The notes below the pieces were generated by a model, which made no database searches, had not been told where the DNA came from, and saw only the letters and a list, made by a program, of their open reading frames with translations. Shown one piece after another: positions 581 to 18,111 of a stretch of DNA of 18,128 nt (positions are counted from its first letter, which is position 1; each line of letters starts with the position of its first letter). Source of the DNA: Prasinococcaceae sp. CCMP 1430 (Eukaryota; Plantae; Prasinodermophyta); the NCBI GenBank assembly GCA_013416795.1, contig RQSC01000024.1:1-18128 (forward strand), given 5' to 3'. The position numbers and the translations under genes are program-made.

Positions 581-2203
581 GCCACCACGCGCCTGGCGTA
601 CCTCTTCGGCGGTGCGCCGTGGCTGGTGCGCACCGAGCGACGGCGCCTGCGGGGCGACGCGCCGCGCGACCGCGCCGAGGGCACGCTCACCGCCGTCGGC
701 CGGCGGCTGGTATTGGTCGGCGGGGAGTGCGCGACGACGGGGACGGGTGCGAGCGCGCCCGTCCCCGTGGGCGGCGGTGGCGACACGCACTGTCTCGACC
801 TGGACGCCATGGCGTGGACGCTCGTGCCCGCTCAGGCCTGCAGAGGCGCAGGCGCCGCCCGCGCTGGCCACGCCGCGGCGGTGGGGGCCAAAGGCCGCCT
901 CGTTGTGGTGGGCGGGCGCGCTGTGGAGGCGCCCGCAGCAGCGGCCGCGCGCGCGAGCGAGAAATTGGAGAGTGCCGCCGACGCCGGGGACAGTGGCGGC
1001 GTTGGGGACGACGGCTCCGGCGACGCCCCCACGTCGGCCAGCGCGGGCGGTGCTCCGACGCATCGCGCGGACGCCGCCGTTATGGACTTGGACGCGTTGC
1101 GCTGGGGCGCTCCCCGCCTCAGCCCCCAGGGGGTGGCCGCCGCGCGCGAGGGCGCGGCCGCGTGCGCGGTGCGTGGGCGCTGCTACGCCTTCGGCGGATG
1201 GGATGCGCGCGCCCAGTGCCTCACCGCGGACCTCCTTCGCCTGGACTTTTCCGAGGCGGAAGCCTGGGCGACCGTGCCCACGCGCGGCGCGGCGCCGCCG
1301 CCGCGGCGCGACCACGCGCTGTGCGCGGCCCAGGATGGCCGCCGCCTGTGGCTCTTCGGCGGGCGCGGCGGCAACGGCGGCGCGCTCGCCGACCTGCACG
1401 TGCTCCACCTCGACATGGCGGTGCCGAGCTGGCAACACCTGGCGCAGCCGTCCGGTGCGCGATGGCCGAGCGCGAGAGAGGGCGCCAGCGTTGGGTTCGT
1501 CGATGGAAGGCACCTGGTGCTGGCGGGCGGCCAGGATGGCCAGGGGGCGCTCGAGGACGCGTGGGTCATGGACACCGAGACGCTCGAGTGGGTGCCACTC
1601 GAGGACGCCGCGAGCGAGGGCGTCCCCACGACGCCGGTGACGCCTTCGGCAGCGTCAAGGGCCGACTCTCCGTCCCTGCGGCGTCCCCGCGGCGCAGCGC
1701 AGGCAGCACGCCCGGGCGGCGGCGCGCCGCGTGCGGGGCAGGCGTCGGTGCTGAGCGCGAGTGGCCTGACGCACGCGCCGTATCGCGCCATGGTTGGCAG
1801 GCGGCTCTACGCGCTCCACTCCAGCGGCCCGGACCAGCTATTGAGCGAGCTGACGTGGATGGAGCTCACGCCGCCCGACGAGCTCGAGGCGCTGCGACCC
1901 GCGCGCAGCGACGCAGCCCGAGCCTCCGACCGCCCCGAGCTCGCCGACGAGGTGGCGGCGACCGCGCACACGCTCGAGGTCGCGTGGGGCGTGCCGCAGC
2001 GCAGCGCCGACCTCGTCGACCACTGCAAGCTCCTGATGGCCTCCACCGGCGGCGTGGTGCGCGAGGTCTGCTCGGGCCGCATGTCCAAGCACACGGTCAC
2101 CGGCCTGCGCGCCAACACGGAGTACATCTTCAGCGTCAAGGTGGTGTACGTGGACGGGCTGTGCAGGTGGTCGGAGAGCAAGGCGTACCGCACGCGCATG
2201 TAG
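581..2203 (+). CDS. last exon: Kelch-repeat beta-propeller plus C-terminal fibronectin type III domain
   Basis: Six Kelch-type hydrophobic-GG motifs (YLFGG, LVLVGG, LVVVGG, YAFGGWD, WLFGGRG, VLAGGQD) with P..R..H-type linkers (PPPRRDHALC). The C-terminus LEVAWGVP...TVTGLRANTEYIFSVKV...G...WSE fits the FN3 consensus. Stop TAG 2201-2203. Confidence 0.85.
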   Translation, partial: ATTRLAYLFGGAPWLVRTERRRLRGDAPRDRAEGTLTAVGRRLVLVGGECATTGTGASAPVPVGGGGDTHCLDLDAMAWTLVPAQACRGAGAARAGHAAAVGAKGRLVVVGGRAVEAPAAAAARASEKLESAADAGDSGGVGDDGSGDAPTSASAGGAPTHRADAAVMDLDALRWGAPRLSPQGVAAAREGAAACAVRGRCYAFGGWDARAQCLTADLLRLDFSEAEAWATVPTRGAAPPPRRDHALCAAQDGRRLWLFGGRGGNGGALADLHVLHLDMAVPSWQHLAQPSGARWPSAREGASVGFVDGRHLVLAGGQDGQGALEDAWVMDTETLEWVPLEDAASEGVPTTPVTPSAASRADSPSLRRPRGAAQAARPGGGAPRAGQASVLSASGLTHAPYRAMVGRRLYALHSSGPDQLLSELTWMELTPPDELEALRPARSDAARASDRPELADEVAATAHTLEVAWGVPQRSADLVDHCKLLMASTGGVVREVCSGRMSKHTVTGLRANTEYIFSVKVVYVDGLCRWSESKAYRTRM

Positions 2204-4939: not shown

Positions 4940-5837
4940 ACTGCGCCACCTGCTGCCGCGCCTTCTCGGCCTCCCTGCGCACCTTCTCCATCTCCTGCTG
5001 CATCTTCTGCTGCATTTCCATCTGAGCCCTGGCCTGGGCCTCCATGTGGGCCTGCGCCTGCGCCTGACTCGCCTGCTTCTGCATCTCGATCCGCTTCAGC
5101 TGCTCCTGGATCGCCGCGAGCTTGGCGGCCTTCTTCTTCTTCTTTGCCTCCTTCTTGCGCCTCTTCTCCTCGGCCGCCTTGTCGACGCCGCCCCCCGCGG
5201 CGCCCTTGCTCCCCTTGCTGCTCTTGCCGCCTTTGGCCTTGCCCGCGGCGCCGTCGGCGCCCGACCCCCCCGCCCCCGCTGCGATCCCGGGCTTGATCGC
5301 CTTGTCCATCTCCTCGATCCAGATGCTCGAACCGGGCGGCCCGCCGACGATCGGAGTGCCGTCGCGCGCGACGAAGTCGGGGAGCGGGATGAGGGGCTCG
5401 GGCAACAGGTTGCCTGTCGAGCCGGCCTTGCCCACGGCGGGCGGCCCCTTGGGCTTGCCGAGGCCCGCGCCCTTGCCCTTGCCCTTGCCCTCGGACTTCT
5501 GCTTCTTCTGTGCGCGCGCGCCCGCGTCGTACGCGGGGTCGTCCCGCGCGAATTTCATCGAGGGCTGGCGCGAGCGCTTGCCCAGCGCCGACACGGTGGG
5601 CGACACGGGCACGGCCGCGGCGCCGCCTGCGGCGGCGTCCGCCGCCTCCGCGCTGGCCGCTGGCAGCTGCGGGAACGGCAGGGCCTCCACGGGCAGCTCC
5701 TCAAACGTGTACCCCTTGGGAAGCTTGGGCTTCATGCGCCTGGCCTCCTTTCGCGACATCCACACGGACACCGTCGACGCGGGGCCCGGCGGCGCCGCGG
5801 GGGGCGGGCCCGCAGCGGCGGAAGTCGGCGCGGCGGC
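3453..5837 (-). CDS. BET/GTE-family bromodomain + extraterminal (ET) domain protein, 5' end lost in gap; apparent frameshift at 3709-3722
   Basis: Bromodomain ~4680-4380 (FQVPVDPVALGIPNYFDVIKSPMDL...FAVDMRLIFNNAITYNG). ET domain ~4143-3945 (RDMTYDEKEQLTNSLGEL...EEIELDVDTLPAKVLWDLDAFV). Also polyQ, K-rich and S/D-rich tracts typical of BET proteins. Confidence 0.9.
4908..4937 (-). repeat. (CAG)10 coding trinucleotide repeat (polyQ)
   Basis: Ten CTG units on the + strand, translated as Q10 in the bromodomain gene. Confidence 0.95.
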
Positions 5838-10882: not shown

Positions 10883-10988
10883 ATGCGTGCATGCGCTCGC
10901 GCGCGCGCAGCGACGACGGAGTGCGCCGCCGCGGCTGACGTCGGCATGCTCCCACGCGCGCGCGCCCCTGCTGCGCGTGCTCAACAAG

Positions 10989-11481
10989 GTTCGAGCGCGA
11001 CTCGGGCAACGCGCAGGACCTCCGCTGGCTGCGCAAGGTGCGCTCCTCCGGCACGAGCGCCGACCGCGTGGCGGCGGCGACGCTGCTGGTGCAGCAGTCC
11101 CCCGCGGCCAACCTGGCGCAGCTGGACGCGCTGCTGGGCATGGTGAGCGGCAAGGGCCACCGCGACACGGCGGCGGCCGTCGACGCGCTGCGCGAGCTCT
11201 TCGCGACGGCGCTGCTGCCCGACGACCGCACGCTGCGCCCGCTCGCCGCCAACGACCTCGAGGCGGCGCTGGCGGAGCTCGAGGCCGCCAAGGCCAAGGG
11301 CGTGGGCGCCGCCGAGCGCGCGAGGGAGAGGCTGGCGCTGTGGCGCCTCGAGGACGCGCTGCGCTCGCGCTACGCGCGGCTGGTGGCGGGCCTCGGCGAG
11401 CTCTCCACCGCGCAGCTGCCCTTCCTCAAGGAGCGCGCGCTGCGGGCGGCCCACGCGCTGCTGCTGCGCAAGCCCGAGCAG
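10989..11481 (+). CDS. CEBPZ: CEBPZ/Mak21/Noc1 exon
   Basis: The first AG after the GCTGAC branch site is at 10987-10988. WLRKVRSSGTSADRVAAATLLVQQSP...LDALLGMV...LLPDDRTL...LWRLEDALRSRY...LLLRKPEQ matches the conserved Noc1 N-terminal block. Donor CAG|GTGCGT. Confidence 0.92.
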
Positions 11482-11557
11482 GTGCGTCCGTCGGCGGCGC
11501 GCCCGCGCGCGCCGCGGCCAGTGCGAACGAGCGCGGCTCGGCACACACACACGCGCG

Positions 11558-11610
<53 letters not shown>

Positions 11611-11739
11611 GCGCACCGTACCATCGACGACCCCGACAGAGCAGCCTCGCGCGCGCACGAGCGCGTCGCCCGCGTCGCGCGCGCTCGGAGCCCGTGCTGA
11701 CGGCGCCCGTCGCATGTTTCCGCGATGCGGCGCGCGCAG
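11482..11739 (+). other. spliceosomal intron (258 nt) containing (CA)n
   Basis: GTGCGT donor, GCTGAC branch site ~11696-11701, GCGCAG acceptor. Removal gives RKPEQ|ERALLKLLVNKLGDP, the conserved Noc1 motif. Confidence 0.92.
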
Positions 11740-14037
11740 GAGCGCGCCCTGCTGAAGCTGCTGGTGAACAAGCTGGGCGACCCCGAGCGCAAGGTGGCCT
11801 CCAAGGCGGGCTACCTGCTGCACGGCCTGCTGGAGGAGCACCCGAACATGGCGCACGCCGTGGTGCTCGAGGTGGAGAACTTCTGCTTCAGGCCGGGCAT
11901 CTCGGCGCGCGCGCAGTACTACGCGGCGGTCTTCCTCAACCAGCTGGTGCTCACGCACAGGGGCGACGGCCCGCAGGTGGCGGCGCGACTCGTGAGGCTG
12001 TACTTCGCGCTCTTCTCCAGGCAGCTCGAGCGCGCCGGCAGCGACGCCAAGGAGCGCGCCGAGAAGGCCGCGAAGAAGACCGGGGAGAAGGCGCGCAAGG
12101 CGCGCGCGCGGGGGAAGAGAGCGCCGCGGCGCGCGACGGAGAACGCCAAGGAGCGCGCCAAGGAGGCCGCGGCGCCCCTGGAGGCCGCCGTGGACGCGCG
12201 CGTGCTCACCGCTCTGCTCACCGGCGTCAACCGCGCCTTCCCGTACGTGGAGGAGGCCGAGGCCGAGGCGCTCATCGAGGAGCACTCGCCCACGCTGTTC
12301 AAGCTGGCGCACTCGGCGAGCTTCGGCGCGGTCACGCAGGCGCTCGCGCTGCTCTACAAGCTCATGGAGGCGCGCTCGGCGGTGTCGGACAGGTTCTACC
12401 GCGCGCTGTACGCCGCGCTCGCCGCGCCGGCGCTCTCCTCCAGCGTCAAGGCGCCGCTCTTCCTCGCGCTGCTGCTGCGCGCGTGCGCCGCGGACGTGTC
12501 GCACGCGCGCACGGCGGCCTTCGCCAAGCGCTTGCTGCAGGTGGCCGCCGCCGCGCGCCCCGAGTTCACCTGCGGCTGCCTCCTGGTCCTCAGTGCCCTG
12601 CTGCAGAAGCGCCCCGCGCTGTGGACCGCCGTGCTGCAGAGCGAAGTGATGGAGGGCGACGAGGAGGAGCGATTCGCCGACGAGGACGACGAGGACGAGG
12701 AGGGGGACAAGGGCAAGAAAGGGGGATACGACAGCGACGGCAGCGACGGCAGCGGCGGCGACGCGAAGGACCCGGCGGACGCCGCGAACGCCGGCGCCGA
12801 CGCCGGCGCGCCGTCGGGCGCCGTCGTCCCGCGGGGGTCCGCGGGCGAGGGCGGCGAGGCGGAGAGAGACGCGGGCTACGACGCCTCGAAGCGCGAGCCG
12901 CTGTTCGCGCGCGCCGCCGGCGCGTGCGCGTGGGAACTCGCCGCGCTCTCGCGGCACGTGCACCCGAGCGTTGCGGCGATGGCGCGCACGCTGCTCGCTG
13001 GCGCGCCCATCTCGTACTCGGGCGACCCCATCGTCGACCTGAGCCTGGCGCCCTTCCTGGACAAGTGGCTGCACAAGGCGCCGCGGCTGCAGCGCGAGGG
13101 GCGCAGGCGCTTCCGCGGCGCCTCGCTCATGCAGCGCGTGACGGGCGCGGGCGACGGCGGCGGCGAGGGGGACGAGGGGGCTGGGGGTGACAAGAGGCGC
13201 GCCTTCGGCGGCGGCGTGTCGGCCGCTGACGGCGTGGAGGCGCTCGCGGCGGCCGCGCCCGAGGACGTCCTGCCCTCGGACCGCTTCTTCGCGCGCTTCA
13301 TCCAGCTCAAGCGCGGCGGGCAGCAGCAGGCGGCCGCGCGCAAGGCGCGCGTGCAAGCCGAGCTCGAGGAGCGCCAGAGGCGCGAGGACGGCGCCGAGGA
13401 CGGCCACGACGACTTCGCGCGCGATGGCAGCGACGATGACAGCGACGACAGCGACGAGGACGGTGACGTGGCCGTCGGCAGCGACGACAGCGACGACGAC
13501 GACGACGACGACGGCGTAGCGGTCGGCGCCGAGAGCGATGACGAGGATGACTACGACGTCGCAGAGGAGGAGGACGTCGAGAATGATTCCGAGGGCGGTG
13601 GCGATGGCGGCAGCGACTCCGAGTATGACGACGACGCCCTGCGCGCGGCCATCGAGATGGACGAGGACGCCATCGACGCGGGCGAGCAGGGCGACGGCTC
13701 CGACCTCAGCGACGTGGAGGACGACAGCGGCGCGGACTCGGACGCGGCGGAGGGGGACAGCGACGGCGAGGAGGACTCGGACTCGGACGGGGACGAGCCT
13801 TGGCTCTTCGGCGGCGAAGACAGCAGCGACGGGGACGGCGACGGCGCGTCGAGCGAGGACGACGCGAGCGCCGAGGGAGCCAAGGGCGGCAAGCGCGCGC
13901 GCGGCTCGAACCCGTTCGCGAGCGCTGACGACTACATGGAGGCCATCGAGGCGGACGAGTACATCGGCAAGGCCAAGGGCGGCGGCAAGGGCGGCGGCAA
14001 GAAGGGCGGCAAGCCCGCCAAGCGCGCGCGCAGGTGA
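11740..14037 (+). CDS. CEBPZ: CEBPZ/Mak21/Noc1 last exon (CBF/Mak21 domain, acidic C-terminal tract, basic tail)
   Basis: LVNKLGDPERKVASKA, HPNM, QYYAAVFLNQ, ALLTGVNRAFPY, DRFYRALY, AFAKRLLQ, YDASKREPLFA, HVHPSVA, YSGDPIVDLSLAPFLDKW, NPFASADDY are hallmark motifs of the family. Stop TGA 14035-14037. Confidence 0.95.
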   Translation, partial: ERALLKLLVNKLGDPERKVASKAGYLLHGLLEEHPNMAHAVVLEVENFCFRPGISARAQYYAAVFLNQLVLTHRGDGPQVAARLVRLYFALFSRQLERAGSDAKERAEKAAKKTGEKARKARARGKRAPRRATENAKERAKEAAAPLEAAVDARVLTALLTGVNRAFPYVEEAEAEALIEEHSPTLFKLAHSASFGAVTQALALLYKLMEARSAVSDRFYRALYAALAAPALSSSVKAPLFLALLLRACAADVSHARTAAFAKRLLQVAAAARPEFTCGCLLVLSALLQKRPALWTAVLQSEVMEGDEEERFADEDDEDEEGDKGKKGGYDSDGSDGSGGDAKDPADAANAGADAGAPSGAVVPRGSAGEGGEAERDAGYDASKREPLFARAAGACAWELAALSRHVHPSVAAMARTLLAGAPISYSGDPIVDLSLAPFLDKWLHKAPRLQREGRRRFRGASLMQRVTGAGDGGGEGDEGAGGDKRRAFGGGVSAADGVEALAAAAPEDVLPSDRFFARFIQLKRGGQQQAAARKARVQAELEERQRREDGAEDGHDDFARDGSDDDSDDSDEDGDVAVGSDDSDDDDDDDGVAVGAESDDEDDYDVAEEEDVENDSEGGGDGGSDSEYDDDALRAAIEMDEDAIDAGEQGDGSDLSDVEDDSGADSDAAEGDSDGEEDSDSDGDEPWLFGGEDSSDGDGDGASSEDDASAEGAKGGKRARGSNPFASADDYMEAIEADEYIGKAKGGGKGGGKKGGKPAKRARR

Positions 14038-14415
14038 TGGCCGGCGCCGCTCGTTCACCGCTCCTCCGTAATGCGTGTGCACTCGACGCACCACACGCAC
14101 GCACACGCGCTCATGCCGCGTTCGCGGGCGCGCTCGCGCGCGCCGCCGTGCGCCCACTCGTGCGTTGCCGCGGCAGCGTGCCACACGTCGCGGCGCCCCC
14201 GGGCGGTGGCCTGCCACGCCACATCGCCGCCGCCTCTGGCGGCGGCGCGGCAGCGGCATAGGACGTGCGAGCAAGGTGGGAGGGGGCGTTAGGGGGGGGT
14301 CCTCGGGTCGCGCGCGCGCGTCCCGCCGCCGACGCAACTCGCCGCCGGTGCTGACGCCCCCGGGCCTTGACCCTCCTCCTCTCCCTTCGCGTGACTCGGC
14401 GTGGAACTCCTGCAG

Positions 14416-14566
14416 AGGCGCGCAAGCAAAAGATGTCGGAAATTGACGAGGACATCAGCGAAGCAGAGTCGCTCATCCGCCGCATGGATCTCGAGGCGCG
14501 CACGACGACGCCGGACACCAAGACGGTGCTGCTCGGCAGGCTGCGCGACTACAAGGCGGACCTGAA
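14416..14566 (+). CDS. VTI1: single exon of a VTI1-type Qb-SNARE (N-terminal helical domain), truncated at an N
   Basis: After the CTGCAG acceptor: EARKQKMSEIDEDISEAESLIRRMDLEARTTTPDTKTVLLGRLRDYKADL, matching the recalled plant VTI1 KQKLSEI...AE.LIRKMDLEAR...KLREYKSDL segment. Confidence 0.8.
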
Positions 14567-14567
14567 N
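14567..14567. other. single N: probable scaffold gap of unknown size
   Basis: The VTI1 frame stops mid-domain at the N and an unrelated methyltransferase begins mid-domain, in another frame, immediately after it. Confidence 0.8.
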
Positions 14568-16421
14568 GGTGGTGCGCTGCGGCGACGGCCTCGCCGAGGC
14601 CGCCGCCGAGCGGTACGACGCCATCCACGTGGGGGCCGCCGCCGACGGCGGCGTCCCGGAGCCGCTGCTGGCGCTGCTGGCACCGGGAGGGCGCATGCTG
14701 GTGCCGGTGGGCGGCGGCACGCAGCAGGCGTGGCTGTGCGTCGACAGGGCAGCGGAGGCCGACGGCGCCGGCGTCAGCGCGCACGTCGTCACGCGCGTGC
14801 GCTACGTGCCCCTGCTGCCGGGCGTGGCCCAACAAGCGCGAAAGGACGGCGCAGCGGAAGGTTGGAGGCGGCGGCGGGGGCGGCGACGGGTGCGGGGGCG
14901 AGGCGAGGCGTCCGCTGGCGCGGAGGTCGGCGCCAACGCCGCGTCGGCACAGCGGCCCAGGGCCGGGCACGGCCGCGACGTCGTTGCCGGCCGCGTGGAC
15001 TACGACGCGCGCTACGCGCGAGGGTGGGCGTACGGGCGGGCGCCCAGCGCGCGCGTCGGCGCGTTCGCGCGAGGGGCGTCGGGCGAGCGGCTCGCGGCGC
15101 GCGGAGGGGCGGCGCTCGTGCTCGGGGCGGGCCAGGGGCGCAACGCCGTCTGCCTCGCCGAGGCCGGTTGGCAGACGGTGATCGCAGTGGACAGCTCATC
15201 AGTCGGCCTGGCCAAGTGCGAGGCGCTGGCGGCGCAGCGCGGCGTGTCCGAGCGCGTGGTGTGCGTACGGCACGACCTGCGCGCCGGGCTGCCCCCCGCC
15301 CACGCGCATGCGCGCTGCGCGGAGTGCTACGACGCGGTCGTGAGCGCGTTCTTCGCGCTGCCGCGGCGGGCCCGCGCGGCGCTGCACGCCGAGTGCAGCG
15401 CCGCCCTGGCCGACGGAGGGGCGTTCGTGTACGAGAACTTCTCGGCGGCGCACGCCGGGACGAGCGGGCCCCCGCGCGCCTGGCTGCCGACGCGCGAGGA
15501 GCTTGCCGCGGAGCTGCCGGGCGTCGCGTTCGAAGCCGGCGAGGACGTCTCTGAGCGCCTGGAGGAGGGTCGGTTCCACCACTGCGACGCCACGCTCACG
15601 CGCGTCGTGGGCGCCAAGCGCAGCGTTCGTGCCGTCGGCCGCGCGGGTGGCAATGGCGCAGCGCCCGCAGGGCTCGTCGCGGACGTCGATGCGGTGTTCG
15701 CCGAACACGCCGACTACAGCGCGAGCCTGCAGGCGAAAGCCGCGCGTGGGACCGTATGCGATGAGGAGGACGGCGTCGCCGCCACCGATGCCTTGCTGGA
15801 GCGCGCGCCTGACATCGTCGCTGTGGCGTGCCACGAGGCGACGCGCGCAAGCGTGTGCAGGTACTGCTGGATGCGCCCGCCCTGCGTGTGTCAGCGAGTC
15901 GCAGACGCGGCGCGCGCGGCGGCTGCAGCTGACGATGGCACGGGCGCCGCCGGAACGCCTCGCGAGATTCGCTGGGTGATCGCCACCCATGCGTGCGAGT
16001 TCCTGCGCTCAACGGCCAGTGCGCGCACGGCATCGTGCGCACTGGAGGCCCTGTGCGAGACAACGCTCGAGCGCGCGGAGGGGCGCGCGTGCACGCTCGC
16101 TGTGGTAGGGGGGTCGACGGCAGGGGACGCGGCGCTCGCCGAGGCACTCTCGCAGTGTCCCGAGGGGGCTGAAGGCGGTGCACCCGTGTGCGTGCTGTAC
16201 CCGAACGCGCCTGGTGGGCGGCAGTGCGTGTCTGTGCGCGAGGCGCTCGCGGCCTGCACGCGCGGGCGTGGCGTCGGCACGGCTTCGGCCACCGCAGAGG
16301 CGCTGACCGTCATCGTCCCCGATGGTTCGAGCGACAACGCCGCTGCTCTCGTCGACGAAATCGAGCGCCGGTGTCCAGGACGGCTGTCTTACGTCGCGTT
16401 GGACCCAGCGGAGGTCGCCAG
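14568..16421 (+). CDS. 5'-partial exon: PIMT/PCMT C-terminal half (14569-14820) + class I SAM methyltransferase (~15001-15621) + DTW domain N-terminal part (~15856-16421)
   Basis: GDG...YDAIHVGAAA..VPEPLL..LAPGGRMLVPVG...VRYVPL (PIMT); YDARY...AYGRAP...LVLGAGQGRNAVCLA...VIAVDSSSVGLAK...GGAFVYENF...EGRFH (methyltransferase); CRYCWMRPPCVC...THACEFLRST...VLYP...VIVPDGSS (DTW). One stop-free frame, ending at an AG|GTGCGT donor. Confidence 0.8.
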
Positions 16422-16539
16422 GTGCGTCACAGTCGCAGCGGCAGCGCCCCAGCCACGCGTTCATCCCCCGCCGCGCTCTCGCCGCCGATGCGCGCGCGTC
16501 AGTCCACGCGTGCGGCGCTGACGTCGCTTCGCCGCGCAG
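16422..16539 (+). other. spliceosomal intron (118 nt)
   Basis: GTGCGT donor, GCTGAC branch site 16517-16522, GCGCAG acceptor; phase 2 on both sides (AG|G = Arg). Confidence 0.85.
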
Positions 16540-16925
16540 GTCCCACTCTCCGCTGCTGAGCGCGCTCCATCCCGGTGCGGGGCGCGGGCGCCTGAGCACC
16601 CTGGAGGCCGTCGCCGCGTTCCACGGCGAGGCGGGGCTCCGCGCGCACGAGCGGGCACTGCGGGCCGCGCTCGGCGTGCTCACCGCGCGCGTCGCGGCGG
16701 ACCGCGAGGCGGCCAGTCCCTCCCATGCTGAGGACGGTGGCGAGCGGGACGCCCCGCCTGAGTGGGTGGGCGCCATCCGTGAGGCGGCCGCGCGCGCGTG
16801 CGCGCGTGCGGCCTNNNNNNNNNNNNNNNNNNNNNNNNNNNNNNNNNNNNNNNNNNNNNNNNNNNNNNNNNNNNNNNNNNNNNNGGGACGCGGGCGCGCA
16901 CGAGGCCAAGGGGCTGCGCTGGTGA
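16540..16925 (+). CDS. last exon of the fusion gene: DTW C-terminal motif and extension, interrupted by a gap
   Basis: SHSPLLSALHPGAGRGRLSTLEAVAAF matches the DTW (L/M)STxEA motif. After the 70-N gap, DAGAHEAKGLRW-TGA (16923-16925) is the likely end; the frame across the gap cannot be verified. Confidence 0.65.
16815..16884. other. assembly gap (70 N)
   Basis: Run of N. Confidence 1.
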
Positions 16926-16962
16926 CGCGCGCGAGGCCAGGGGGCTGCGCTGGTGACGCGCG
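16901..16962. repeat. 31-bp tandem duplication (two copies, one mismatch) spanning the probable stop codon
   Basis: CGAGGCCA(A/G)GGGGCTGCGCTGGTGACGCGCG at 16901 and 16932. Confidence 0.9.
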
Positions 16963-17505
16963 CGCGGACGGCGCGCTGGCTGGCTGCGCGCTGGCGTCGG
17001 CGCGGCACGTGTGTATGAAATATGAAATGTACTATTCCGTGCCCGTGGGTCATTGTGATGTGTGAAATGATGAGTGATGTGGTGAGGAAAAAGGAAGCAT
17101 ATCAGAACGCATTGAGAGCCGGGGCGCGCGCGCACGGCGGAGCGGAAGGCTCCTCGTGGCGATCGTCGCGGTCACGAACGAGCATACATGTAAGGGGTGC
17201 GGACGCGCGCCACGGCGTGTCCAAAACGACGGAACGGAAACCTAAATTGCGTGTTGACCGTTGGTGGCTCGCGTGCGGCCTGCAGCGCCCGGGGACGCGT
17301 TTCCGAGTAAAAAGCGACGGCAATATGTGTGCTCTCTCTCTCTCTCTCGGCATGCCCGTACGACTGATGCCATCGGCATAGCGTGTCGACACGAGCGATG
17401 GCCCCCTGAGATCATCAGAGGCGGTCCACTGCGCTTAGCAACGGGCGTGCTAGGATCCGCACCCCGTGCAAAACCGCGGCCAGGGCGCGCCGCCCACCAA
17501 CGATA

Positions 17506-17961: not shown

Positions 17962-18111
17962 GCGCGCCCGCGGCGCTCGCCCGCATCGCAGAACCCTAAA
18001 CCCTAAACCCAAAAGATCCGATGCACAGGGATTCATGTATTTTGACATTCATGTACGTTTGGGTTAGGTTCGGCGCCGGCGGCCCCGCGTCGCGGCGCCA
18101 CGCGGGCGCGC
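17962..18111. mobile_element. possible MITE-like/foldback element with telomere-like inner arms
   Basis: Perfect 11-bp inverted repeat (17962-17972 / 18101-18111) plus an imperfect inner inverted repeat (17999-18013 / 18058-18070) sharing about the same centre (~18035). No target-site duplication identified. Confidence 0.3.
17992..18010 (+). repeat. short interstitial plant-type telomere-like repeat (AACCCTA x2.7; telo-box-like)
   Basis: AACCCTAAACCCTAAACCC read directly. Confidence 0.8.

What the first reader, a model, noticed from the sequence alone, without database searches (positions are those of the whole stretch)
14568..16925. Three SAM-dependent enzyme domains in one reading frame: PIMT + class I methyltransferase + DTW
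Seen: one stop-free frame of ~618 codons plus a correctly phased downstream exon carries, in order, the C-terminal half of protein-L-isoaspartate O-methyltransferase, a complete Rossmann-type methyltransferase and a DTW domain. Established: PIMT repairs isoaspartyl damage using SAM; DTW proteins (TapT/YfiP, DTWD1/2) use SAM to add the aminocarboxypropyl group of tRNA acp3U; PIMT and DTW enzymes are normally stand-alone. I know no described protein with this combination. Inference: a multifunctional SAM-consuming protein coupling protein repair, methylation and tRNA modification. Caveats: the 5' end is lost at the N, and long ORFs arise easily at this GC content, although three domains sharing frame and strand with no stop argues for fusion.
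Basis: partly seen in the sequence, partly recalled or inferred. Interest (0 to 1): 0.8.

Follow-up and report, generated by a model that had tools for sequence, protein, structure and literature searches.

The report
PIMT–methyltransferase–DTW–zinc-finger fusion gene
The window holds most of a real green-alga gene (Prasinoderma coloniale PRCOL_00007239) that joins a protein-repair methyltransferase, a second methyltransferase, a tRNA-type aminocarboxypropyl transferase and an RNA-binding zinc finger in one protein; many marine protists share this layout, but I found no paper that studies it.

Summary
Window 14569-16421 plus exon 2 from 16540 (118-nt GT..AG intron) encodes, in order, the C-terminal half of PIMT, a complete Slr1183-like class I methyltransferase and a TapT-like DTW domain.

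Both gaps matter.
- The single N at 14567 hides the first 205 codons. The 235 nt to its left do not belong to this locus.
- The 70-N gap stands for about 294 nt. As written it breaks the frame. It hides a fourth module: a C2H2 (zf-met/JAZ-type) zinc finger and a conserved EPPD motif.

A 98%-identical ungapped TARA contig and the published gene model (1012 aa) give the whole protein.

The fusion is not a high-GC artefact. The same colinear layout occurs in about 20 protein clusters (50% identity), including complete choanoflagellate transcripts (Acanthoeca, Helgoeca) and Tetraselmis striata. A form without PIMT occurs in Prymnesium and Aplanochytrium. The layout is therefore already in sequence databases, but I found no paper describing it.

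In P. coloniale alone the Trp of the D-x-S/T-W motif is Ser. Mutating that Trp cripples TapT and Tsr3.

The function is inferred, not shown: a multi-step SAM-dependent RNA-modification enzyme built around acp3U. Interest is moderate.

The parts
14332..14566 (+). Segment foreign to this locus. It holds the start of a Vti1-like SNARE ORF (14434-14565). It sits where the gene's first 205 codons should be.
   Evidence: No match in the 98%-identical contig L002, which has 617 nt there, including the ATG.
14567..14567 (.). Single N marking a non-continuous join. The PIMT N-terminal half (residues 1-205 of the gene model) is missing.
   Evidence: tblastn places only residues 206 onward of P0173 in the window.
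14569..14820 (+). C-terminal half of the PIMT (PCMT) domain, ending in VRYVPL (14803-14814 encodes YVPL).
   Evidence: Pfam PCMT E 1.1e-13; coordinates.
14821..14994 (+). Linker 1: Arg/Gly/Ala-rich and about 58 codons long. It is species-specific in length (about 15 residues in the closest relative).
   Evidence: Alignment. Against L002: 4 synonymous and 1 non-synonymous change, no indel. It is included in gene model P0173.
14995..15620 (+). Slr1183-like class I SAM methyltransferase (VDYDARY... start; GAGQGRN motif I at 15121-15144).
   Evidence: Methyltransf_25 E 5.9e-8; PDB 2kw5/3mer E 2e-19.
15621..15855 (+). Connector with a conserved VDAVF-E motif (15685-15708). It is helical in the model of a relative, so it is not a free linker.
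   Evidence: Invariant columns in A4/A5; no substitutions against L002; helices with high pLDDT.
15856..16421 (+). DTW domain, first part. Cys4 zinc motif CRYCWMRPPCVC at 15856-15891; HACEFLRSTAS at 15988-16020; VLYP at 16192-16203; VPDGSS at 16315-16332, with Ser where relatives have Trp.
   Evidence: Alignment A3; TapT profile hit; fold match; coordinates.
16422..16539 (+). Intron: GT..AG, 118 nt, phase 2.
   Evidence: used by gene model P0173.
16540..16814 (+). Exon 2, readable part: the DTW C-terminal part (GRGRLSTLEA at 16580-16609) and a helical extension.
16815..16884 (.). Assembly gap, 70 N written, about 294 nt in reality. It hides the C2H2 zinc finger (C-x2-C-x12-H-x5-H) and the EPPD motif.
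   Evidence: L002 5544-5842; P0173 residues about 914-1012; motif alignment.
16885..16925 (+). Last codons (..HEAKGLRW) and the TGA stop at 16923-16925. They are in frame with exon 2 only once the gap length is corrected.

Best explanation
Shown. Window 14569-16925 is the 3' four-fifths of one gene of Prasinoderma coloniale (PRCOL_00007239, about 1012-1025 aa). Its product has four modules in a fixed order: a canonical PIMT domain; an Slr1183/TehB-like class I methyltransferase; a TapT-like DTW (SPOUT-type) domain with an N-terminal Cys4 zinc motif; and a C-terminal zf-met/JAZ-type C2H2 finger followed by a conserved EPPD motif. This is a conserved protein family, patchily spread among protists.

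Inferred. It is an RNA-modifying multi-enzyme.
- The DTW module, helped by its two zinc modules, binds a tRNA and transfers the 3-amino-3-carboxypropyl group of SAM to a uridine, giving acp3U.
- The fused methyltransferase domain or domains then act in the same pathway. Their most likely target is the new amino-acid side chain: the amine for the small-molecule-type Slr1183-like domain, and the free alpha-carboxyl for the PIMT domain.
- Three known pathways set the precedent: TYW2 followed by TYW3/TYW4 in wybutosine; Dph2 followed by Dph5 in diphthamide; and acp3U followed by AcpA (acacp3U) in Vibrio.
- In P. coloniale itself the Trp that caps the SAM methyl group is Ser. Here the acp-transfer step may be weakened or altered, while the rest of the protein stays under constraint.
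For: One gene.
- The gene model P0173 is identical to the window over exon 1.
- The ungapped TARA contig L002 gives a 1025-codon spliced ORF.
- There are no indels in 2247 aligned nt. The intron diverges about three times faster than the exons.

Conserved family.
- An exhaustive profile search found about 40 methyltransferase+DTW proteins. About 20 of them carry an N-terminal PIMT and most carry the zinc finger.
- Named sources: Acanthoeca and Helgoeca transcriptomes ('type:complete'), Tetraselmis striata, Prymnesium parvum, Aplanochytrium, Ectocarpus.
- P0173 and Acanthoeca P0151 are colinear over 1008 columns, E 3e-116.
- Several apparent 'no-PIMT' members are truncated gene calls.

Domain identities.

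Integrated rather than beads on a string.
- The full-length AlphaFold model of a relative has pLDDT 88.1 and pTM 0.71.
- The connector between the methyltransferase and DTW is conserved.

Side-chain chemistry.
- DTW+GNAT fusion proteins exist. The acp3U amine is known to be acetylated by AcpA (bioRxiv 10.1101/723049).
- Bacterial relatives of the middle domain are fused to FMN reductase, MatE or sulfotransferase. That points to small-group rather than nucleobase chemistry.

Trp role: W140 caps the SAM methyl in TapT (PMC12630136). W140A in TapT and W114A in Tsr3 strongly reduce activity (PMC7026641). The Trp is kept in every aligned relative whose sequence covers the motif.
Against: - No activity, RNA target or product has been measured for any member.
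- The PIMT domain looks fully canonical: human PCMT1 E 1.4e-49, with the SAPH, DVGxGSG, YDAIHVGAA and YVPL motifs kept. It may simply repair proteins.
- A PIMT-less form exists (Prymnesium, Aplanochytrium), so PIMT is dispensable for the core.
- No methylated acp3U is known; that statement rests on my own knowledge and on the absence of such a report.
- Stand-alone bacterial Slr1183-like genes show no DTW neighbours.
- The DTW of this species is below Pfam's cut-off and lacks the Trp.
- A pTM of 0.71 is suggestive only; I could not inspect inter-domain error estimates.
Confidence: 0.55

Rival explanations
1. Functionally unlinked fusion. The PIMT module is the cell's ordinary isoaspartyl protein-repair enzyme, and it happens to be translated together with a tRNA acp3U enzyme. 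The fusion serves co-expression or localisation only, and the middle methyltransferase has an unrelated small-molecule substrate.
For: - PIMT motifs and similarity to human PCMT1 are at ortholog level.
- PIMT-less members exist in annotated or transcript data.
- Bacterial relatives of the middle domain associate with detoxification-type partners.
- Linker 1 is long and low-complexity in P. coloniale.
Against: - The same order is kept across choanoflagellates, two green-algal lineages and many unnamed marine eukaryotes at 30-50% identity.
- Presence of PIMT is scattered over the methyltransferase-DTW tree, not confined to one recent clade.
- pTM of 0.71 for the whole chain.
Confidence: 0.3
2. 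In P. coloniale the DTW module is a catalytically dead RNA-binding scaffold. With Trp replaced by Ser, it only delivers the two methyltransferases to an RNA or RNP.
For: - The motif is DGSS in both the window and the TARA relative. Every aligned relative whose sequence covers the motif keeps the Trp.
- Trp-to-Ala mutants of TapT and Tsr3 are strongly impaired.
- The P. coloniale branch is long in the tree (2.29 versus 0.56 for its sister) and the Pfam score is below the cut-off.
Against: - All other pocket and zinc motifs are intact: Cys4, HxxEFLRST, LYP, PDG, GRxSTLEA.
- The model folds confidently as TapT.
- Substitutions against L002 are about 1:1 non-synonymous to synonymous, which indicates purifying selection.
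- The Trp mutants retain residual activity.
Confidence: 0.2
3. The RNA substrate is ribosomal RNA or another structured RNA rather than tRNA, as for Tsr3 (m1acp3-pseudouridine in 18S rRNA).
For: - The JAZ/zf-met finger type binds double-stranded RNA in general (Pfam description).
- The neighbouring gene is CBF/Mak21, a ribosome-biogenesis factor.
- TDD-Noc2 fusions have been reported (PMC4275035).
Against: - The family profile and the fold both hit TapT, not Tsr3.
- The N-terminal Cys4 motif is the TapT type, which tRNA modification requires.
- The CBF neighbour is not seen in the distant relative L001.
Confidence: 0.1
4. Artefact. Separate neighbouring genes appear fused only because stop codons are rare at 75% GC, or because of misassembly.
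For: - Very long spurious ORFs do occur here (an 1118-codon antisense ORF).
- The window is misjoined at 14567 and gapped at 16815.
Against: - Independent ungapped contigs, transcript-derived complete ORFs and annotated models from unrelated taxa give the same colinear protein. Some of these have about 59% GC (L003).
- Linker substitutions are mostly synonymous and free of indels.
Confidence: 0.02

Closest known systems
E. coli TapT (YfiP/TuaA) and human DTWD1/DTWD2: tRNA acp3U transferases of the DTW/TDD superfamily
   Same: N-terminal C-x2-C-x6-C-x-C zinc motif, SPOUT-like fold and the D-G-S/T-W region. These are supported by a profile hit at E 1e-4 and by top Foldseek matches.
   Different: TapT is a stand-alone protein of about 230 aa. 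Here the domain is the third of four modules and has long inserts. In P. coloniale the Trp is Ser and the Pfam score is below the cut-off.
Protein-L-isoaspartate O-methyltransferase (PCMT1/PIMT)
   Same: A full-length domain with all signature motifs. Human 1i1n E 1.4e-49 for the relative; Pfam E 4.7e-42 for the gene model.
   Different: PIMT is normally a stand-alone protein of about 225 aa. Here it is the N-terminal module of a protein of about 1000 aa. The window keeps only its last 84 or so residues.
Slr1183 of Synechocystis (PDB 2kw5, 3mer), a structural-genomics methyltransferase of unknown function, TehB/TPMT-like
   Same: The closest solved relative of the middle domain: E 2e-19 for the window and 3.7e-38 for relative P0002.
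   Different: Slr1183 is a stand-alone bacterial protein. Its relatives sit in non-RNA contexts.
TDD proteins with a C-terminal U1-type C2H2 finger (kinetoplastid members of the AT1G03687 family; Burroughs and Aravind 2014, PMC4275035)
   Same: A DTW-superfamily domain followed by an RNA-binding C2H2 finger.
   Different: That paper mentions no methyltransferase or PIMT fusion. I could not test whether this DTW belongs to that subfamily.
Stepwise elaboration of a SAM-derived acp group: TYW2 then TYW3/TYW4 (wybutosine), Dph2 then Dph5 (diphthamide), acp3U then AcpA (acacp3U in Vibrio cholerae)
   Same: An acp transferase is followed by enzymes that modify the acp amine or carboxyl group. DTW+GNAT fusion proteins exist. 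The wybutosine and diphthamide pathways are cited from established knowledge.
   Different: These are functional analogies only. No methylated acp3U has been reported, and in those pathways the enzymes are separate proteins of other families.

Membership tests
PIMT / PCMT (PF01135) | Profile match above Pfam's gathering score | tested here: met
   Window ORF 51.9 bits against a cut-off of 20.3, C-terminal half only. Gene model P0173 144.6 bits over model positions 3-206.
PIMT / PCMT (PF01135) | Signature motifs (T-x-S-A-P-H pre-region, DVGxGSG, YDAIHVGAA, V-R-Y-V-P-L) | tested here: met
   All are present in P0173 and the relatives. In the window itself only YDAIHVGAA and VRYVPL survive; the rest is lost at the N.
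PIMT / PCMT (PF01135) | Methylates L-isoaspartyl residues | not testable with these tools
   Needs an enzyme assay.
Class I SAM methyltransferase, Slr1183/TehB-like | Profile match and glycine-rich motif I | tested here: met
   Methyltransf_25 33.7 bits against a cut-off of 27. GAGQGRN at 15121-15144. Slr1183 E 2e-19.
DTW / TDD superfamily (PF03942) | Profile match above Pfam's gathering score | tested here: not met
   20.4 bits against 33.7 for P0173; no hit on the window pieces. Relatives reach 60-76 bits.
DTW / TDD superfamily (PF03942) | SPOUT-like TapT fold | tested here: met
   AlphaFold model with pLDDT 86.8 and pTM 0.86. Foldseek top hits are TapT 9kz5/9kyt/9kza, prob 0.99-1.0, TM 0.63-0.68 normalised by target.
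DTW / TDD superfamily (PF03942) | N-terminal Cys4 zinc motif (C-x2-C-x6-C-x-C in TapT) | tested here: met
   CRYCWMRPPCVC at 15856-15891, with spacing C-x2-C-x5-C-x-C (one residue shorter). It aligns to TapT C31/C34/C41/C43.
DTW / TDD superfamily (PF03942) | D/E-x-T/S-W motif | tested here: not met
   DGSS at 16321-16332. Asp and Ser are kept, but Trp is replaced by Ser in both the window and L002. Relatives have DGSW or DGTW.
DTW / TDD superfamily (PF03942) | Transfers acp from SAM to uridine N3 in RNA | not testable with these tools
   Needs LC-MS or primer-extension assays.
zf-met / zf-C2H2_jaz (PF12874 / PF12171) | C-x2-C-x12-H-x5-H finger with a profile match | tested here: inconclusive
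   The pattern is present in P0173 and L002 but scores only 12 bits there. Relative P0015 reaches 29.3 and 24.6 bits, above the cut-offs. The Cys and His residues are invariant in 32 sequences. In the window it lies inside the gap.
AT1G03687 subfamily of TDD | Clusters with the Arabidopsis AT1G03687 protein | not tested
This is a lead from PMC4275035 only.

The most novel reading that the evidence does not exclude
The family is a single-chain assembly line that makes an undescribed hypermodified uridine in the tRNA of marine protists. The DTW module installs acp3U. The Slr1183-like module N-methylates the acp amine. A repurposed PIMT module methyl-esterifies the acp alpha-carboxyl. That would be the first case of the isoaspartyl-repair fold acting on an RNA side chain.
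Probability: 0.15. Interest if true: 0.85.

Novelty: new variant of a known kind. Interest (0 to 1): 0.55.

Why it matters
acp3U enzymes were identified only in 2019, and the role of acp3U is still unclear. A conserved protein that welds a TapT-like enzyme to two methyltransferases and a dsRNA-type zinc finger is a ready-made 'Rosetta stone'. It predicts either a new acp3U derivative or an unexpected link between protein repair and tRNA maturation. It also names culturable organisms in which to look: Tetraselmis, Prymnesium, choanoflagellates and Prasinoderma. For genome annotation, such proteins are currently named only 'PIMT' or 'DTW domain protein YfiP', after a single one of their modules.

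Tried and rejected
- Pfam and NCBIfam on the window pieces did not find DTW. Single-sequence PDB searches of the DTW pieces and of exon 2 gave nothing significant. The domain was established only through relatives, a profile and a fold.
- A word-based search with the DTW alignment returned mostly fragments.
- The Prymnesium locus could not be fetched, so I could not check whether a separate PIMT gene lies upstream there.
- Gene neighbourhoods of a stand-alone bacterial Slr1183-like gene showed no DTW or RNA link.
- I built a tree to ask whether the PIMT fusion arose once. The label is scattered (9 changes, no better than shuffles). The test is compromised by truncated gene calls (L003, P0031, P0036), so I draw no conclusion on origin.
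- Literature searches for the combination found nothing relevant: DTW + isoaspartate; aminocarboxypropyltransferase + isoaspartyl; DTWD + Prasinoderma; Slr1183; acp3U + methyl ester.
- I rejected the high-GC read-through artefact, and I rejected treating the two frameshifts in L001 as real, because P0179 is an uninterrupted copy.
- I could not determine the TDD subfamily, nor whether P. coloniale has a second, stand-alone PIMT.
Full report
**What is in the window**

The window is about 75% G+C and has five runs of N. On the + strand, frame 1 is open from 14569, the base after a single N at 14567, to 16521. Pfam places three things on this ORF:
- the last third of PCMT (residues 2-83, model positions 128-206 of 210, E 1.1e-13);
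- a complete Methyltransf_25 domain (residues 183-284, E 5.9e-8);
- no DTW.

The methyltransferase domain matches Slr1183 of Synechocystis, a structural-genomics protein of unknown function, at E 2e-19.

A GT at 16422 and an AG at 16539 bound a 118-nt intron. Splicing it shifts the frame by one and continues the protein as ...PAEVAR|SHSPLLSALHPGAGRGRLSTLEA....

**The two gaps, tested first as requested**

A TARA metagenome scaffold, L002 (7273 nt, ungapped), is 98-99% identical to the window on both sides of each gap.

(a) The N at 14567.
- L002 2680-3296 (617 nt, including the ATG at 2683) has no counterpart in the window.
- Instead the window carries 235 unrelated bases (14332-14566) with the start of a Vti1-like SNARE ORF.
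- The flanks of the N are therefore not continuous. 205 codons of PIMT are missing, and the piece to the left is a misjoin or misplaced contig.

(b) The gap at 16815-16884.
- The window-to-L002 offset is 11271 before the gap and 11047 at the stop codon. The real gap is therefore about 294 nt.
- Because 224 is not a multiple of three, the sequence as written puts exon 2 (frame 2) out of phase with the true stop, TGA 16923-16925 (frame 0).
- With the real length the frame is continuous. In L002 the spliced CDS is 3078 nt, 1025 codons plus stop.
- The hidden stretch encodes a C-x2-C-x12-H-x5-H zinc finger and a conserved EPPD motif.

**Identity of the gene**

The 90%-identity cluster of the L002 protein contains EukProt entry EP00793_Prasinoderma_coloniale_P001876, PRCOL_00007239-RA (P0173, 1012 aa). 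tblastn places its residues 206 to about 822 on window 14569-16421; the few mismatches of the hit lie in the residues that overlap the intron. The window is therefore P. coloniale, and the three-domain protein is already an annotated gene model that uses the same intron.

On that model Pfam gives PCMT 4.7e-42 and Methyltransf_25 1e-11. DTW reaches only 20.4 bits, below the cut-off of 33.7, although the match spans model positions 3-193.

**Is the third domain really DTW?**

Yes, by four lines of evidence.
- It is 41% identical (E 3e-32) to the matching region of P0179, which scores 75.7 bits on Pfam DTW.
- A 27-sequence alignment of this region (A3) conserves the TapT-type Cys4 motif, HPxEFLRSTS, LFP, VPDGSW and GRxSTLEA.
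- The profile of A3 finds the crystal structure of E. coli TapT at E 1e-4, with the Cys4 and DGTW/DGSW motifs aligned.
- An AlphaFold model of the P. coloniale region (pLDDT 86.8, pTM 0.86) has TapT entries as its top Foldseek matches, with probability 1.0 and TM 0.63-0.68 normalised by target.

One defining feature fails. P. coloniale, in both the window and L002, reads DGSS where every aligned relative whose sequence covers the motif has Trp. In TapT, W140 caps the methyl group of SAM (PMC12630136). W140A in TapT and W114A in yeast Tsr3 strongly reduce acp transfer (PMC7026641).

**Is the fusion real, or a by-product of 75% GC?**

ORF length alone is weak evidence here, since an 1118-codon antisense ORF lies next door. 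Comparative data settle the question.
- An exhaustive HMMER search with a methyltransferase+DTW profile, followed by local domain mapping, found about 40 proteins that match across both domains. About 20 clusters at 50% identity carry a PIMT domain in front, and most carry the same zinc finger behind.
- Named members with PIMT are the choanoflagellates Acanthoeca spectabilis and Helgoeca nana (transcriptome ORFs flagged 'type:complete', 908 and 892 aa) and the chlorophyte Tetraselmis striata (TSEL_022881, 1235 aa). One further PIMT-bearing member of unnamed origin (P0013, 1223 aa) is also held by NCBI under the name PIMT.
- Members without PIMT include Prymnesium parvum KAL1526855.1 (UniRef 'tRNA-uridine aminocarboxypropyltransferase') and Aplanochytrium stocchinoi. 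A partial copy comes from Ectocarpus fasciculatus.
- P0173 aligns colinearly with the Acanthoeca protein over 1008 columns, at 35% identity and E 3e-116.
- Between the window and L002 there is no indel in 2247 nt. Linker 1 has 4 synonymous and 1 non-synonymous change, the connector before DTW has none, and the intron diverges about three times faster than the exons.
- A relative with two frameshifts (L001, a polished long-read contig) has an uninterrupted copy elsewhere (P0179), so those shifts are assembly errors.

**PIMT-bearing versus PIMT-less forms**

On a tree of the methyltransferase-DTW-zinc-finger part, the PIMT label is scattered (9 changes, no better than shuffled labels). Several 'PIMT-less' entries are truncated gene calls.
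- In L003 a PIMT exon lies directly upstream of the called gene.
- P0031 and P0036 begin with the PIMT C-terminal ..FVPL motif.

The fused form is therefore at least as widespread as counted. I draw no conclusion about a single or multiple origin.

**What the parts say about function**

- The PIMT domain is canonical: human PCMT1 E 1.4e-49 for the relative, with all motifs kept.
- The middle domain belongs to a mainly bacterial family of about 200-aa proteins typified by Slr1183. Its other fusion partners are an FMN reductase, a MatE transporter and a sulfotransferase, and its gene neighbourhoods are unrelated to RNA. This fits small-group chemistry in the TehB/TPMT manner.
- The zinc finger reaches the zf-met and zf-C2H2_jaz (dsRNA-binding) thresholds in one member. 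Its Cys and His residues are invariant in 32 sequences.
- A full-length AlphaFold model of P0179 has pLDDT 88.1 and pTM 0.71, which hints at a defined inter-domain arrangement.
- DTW domains fused to GNAT acetyltransferases also exist. The acp3U amine is known to be acetylated in Vibrio by AcpA.
- From established knowledge, acp groups installed by TYW2 and by Dph2 are further methylated on nitrogen and on the carboxyl group by TYW3/TYW4 and by Dph5.
- PIMT's natural target is a free alpha-carboxyl next to a two-atom spacer leading to an amide nitrogen. This resembles the acp side chain on N3 of uridine; that resemblance is my inference.

**Best explanation and its limits**

I commit to a conserved multi-step RNA-modification enzyme centred on acp3U. 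DTW plus two zinc modules bind the tRNA and transfer acp. The fused methyltransferases work in the same pathway, probably on the acp side chain.

The architecture is shown. The substrate and the chemistry are inferred. The main rival is an unlinked fusion in which PIMT simply repairs proteins.

In P. coloniale the Trp-to-Ser change makes the acp-transfer step itself doubtful. The domain may be weakened or may serve only as an RNA-binding scaffold, although its other motifs and its fold are intact and substitutions suggest continued constraint.

**Novelty**

In those databases members are named after one module only. Full-text searches found no paper that describes the combination. The 2014 survey of the TDD superfamily reports zinc-finger, Noc2 and inactive-exonuclease fusions but no methyltransferase or PIMT fusion.

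I class it as a new variant of a known kind (DTW-type acp transferases with accessory domains), of moderate interest.

Noticed in passing
window 14332-14566: 235 nt absent from the 98%-identical contig L002. The segment holds the 5' end of a Vti1-like SNARE ORF (MSEIDEDISEAESLIRRMDLEAR..., 14434-14565) cut off by the single N. It is probably a misplaced contig or a chimeric join that begins 3 nt before the gene's ATG.
   Followed up: partly
window 11725-14037 (+): A CBF/Mak21 (Noc1-like) ribosome-biogenesis gene (Pfam E 1.1e-35) lies directly upstream on the same strand, as it does in L002. TDD-Noc2 fusions are reported in the literature, so the proximity may or may not be meaningful. It is not seen in the distant relative L001.
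   Followed up: partly
window 10981-14337 (-): A 1118-codon stop-free ORF runs antisense to the CBF gene. It shows that very long spurious ORFs arise in this genome.
   Followed up: no
window 16895-16964: A 31-nt tandem repeat (2.3 copies, 94% matches) spans the stop codon, so the ..EAKGLRW-TGA ending is nearly duplicated just downstream. It is also present in L002.
   Followed up: no
window 17992-18014 and 11566-11608: An interstitial telomere-like repeat, (AACCCTA) x 3.3, lies near the window's end. A (CA)21 microsatellite lies upstream of the CBF gene.
   Followed up: no
window 626-2200 (+): An ORF with Kelch repeats (E 2e-40) and a weak fibronectin type III match, unrelated to the finding.
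   Followed up: no
hidden in the window gap 16815-16884; seen in L002 about 5800-5830 and alignment A5: A family-wide C-terminal motif, (E/D)PPD(V/I)AL, lies about 35 residues after the zinc finger and has an invariant Asp. Its function is unknown.
   Followed up: partly
proteins P0203 and P0204 (metagenomic): DTW domains (138-155 bits) fused to a C-terminal GNAT acetyltransferase. This natural fusion mirrors the acp3U-to-acacp3U chemistry known from Vibrio.
   Followed up: partly
L001 about 9810 and about 10090: Two frameshifts in the DTW and zinc-finger part of the relative's gene, on a polished long-read contig. An uninterrupted copy (P0179) shows they are assembly errors.
   Followed up: yes
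L003 5181-5807: A PIMT exon lies directly upstream of a gene call (P0077) that looked PIMT-less. Prokaryote-style gene calling on eukaryotic metagenome contigs undercounts the fused form.
   Followed up: yes
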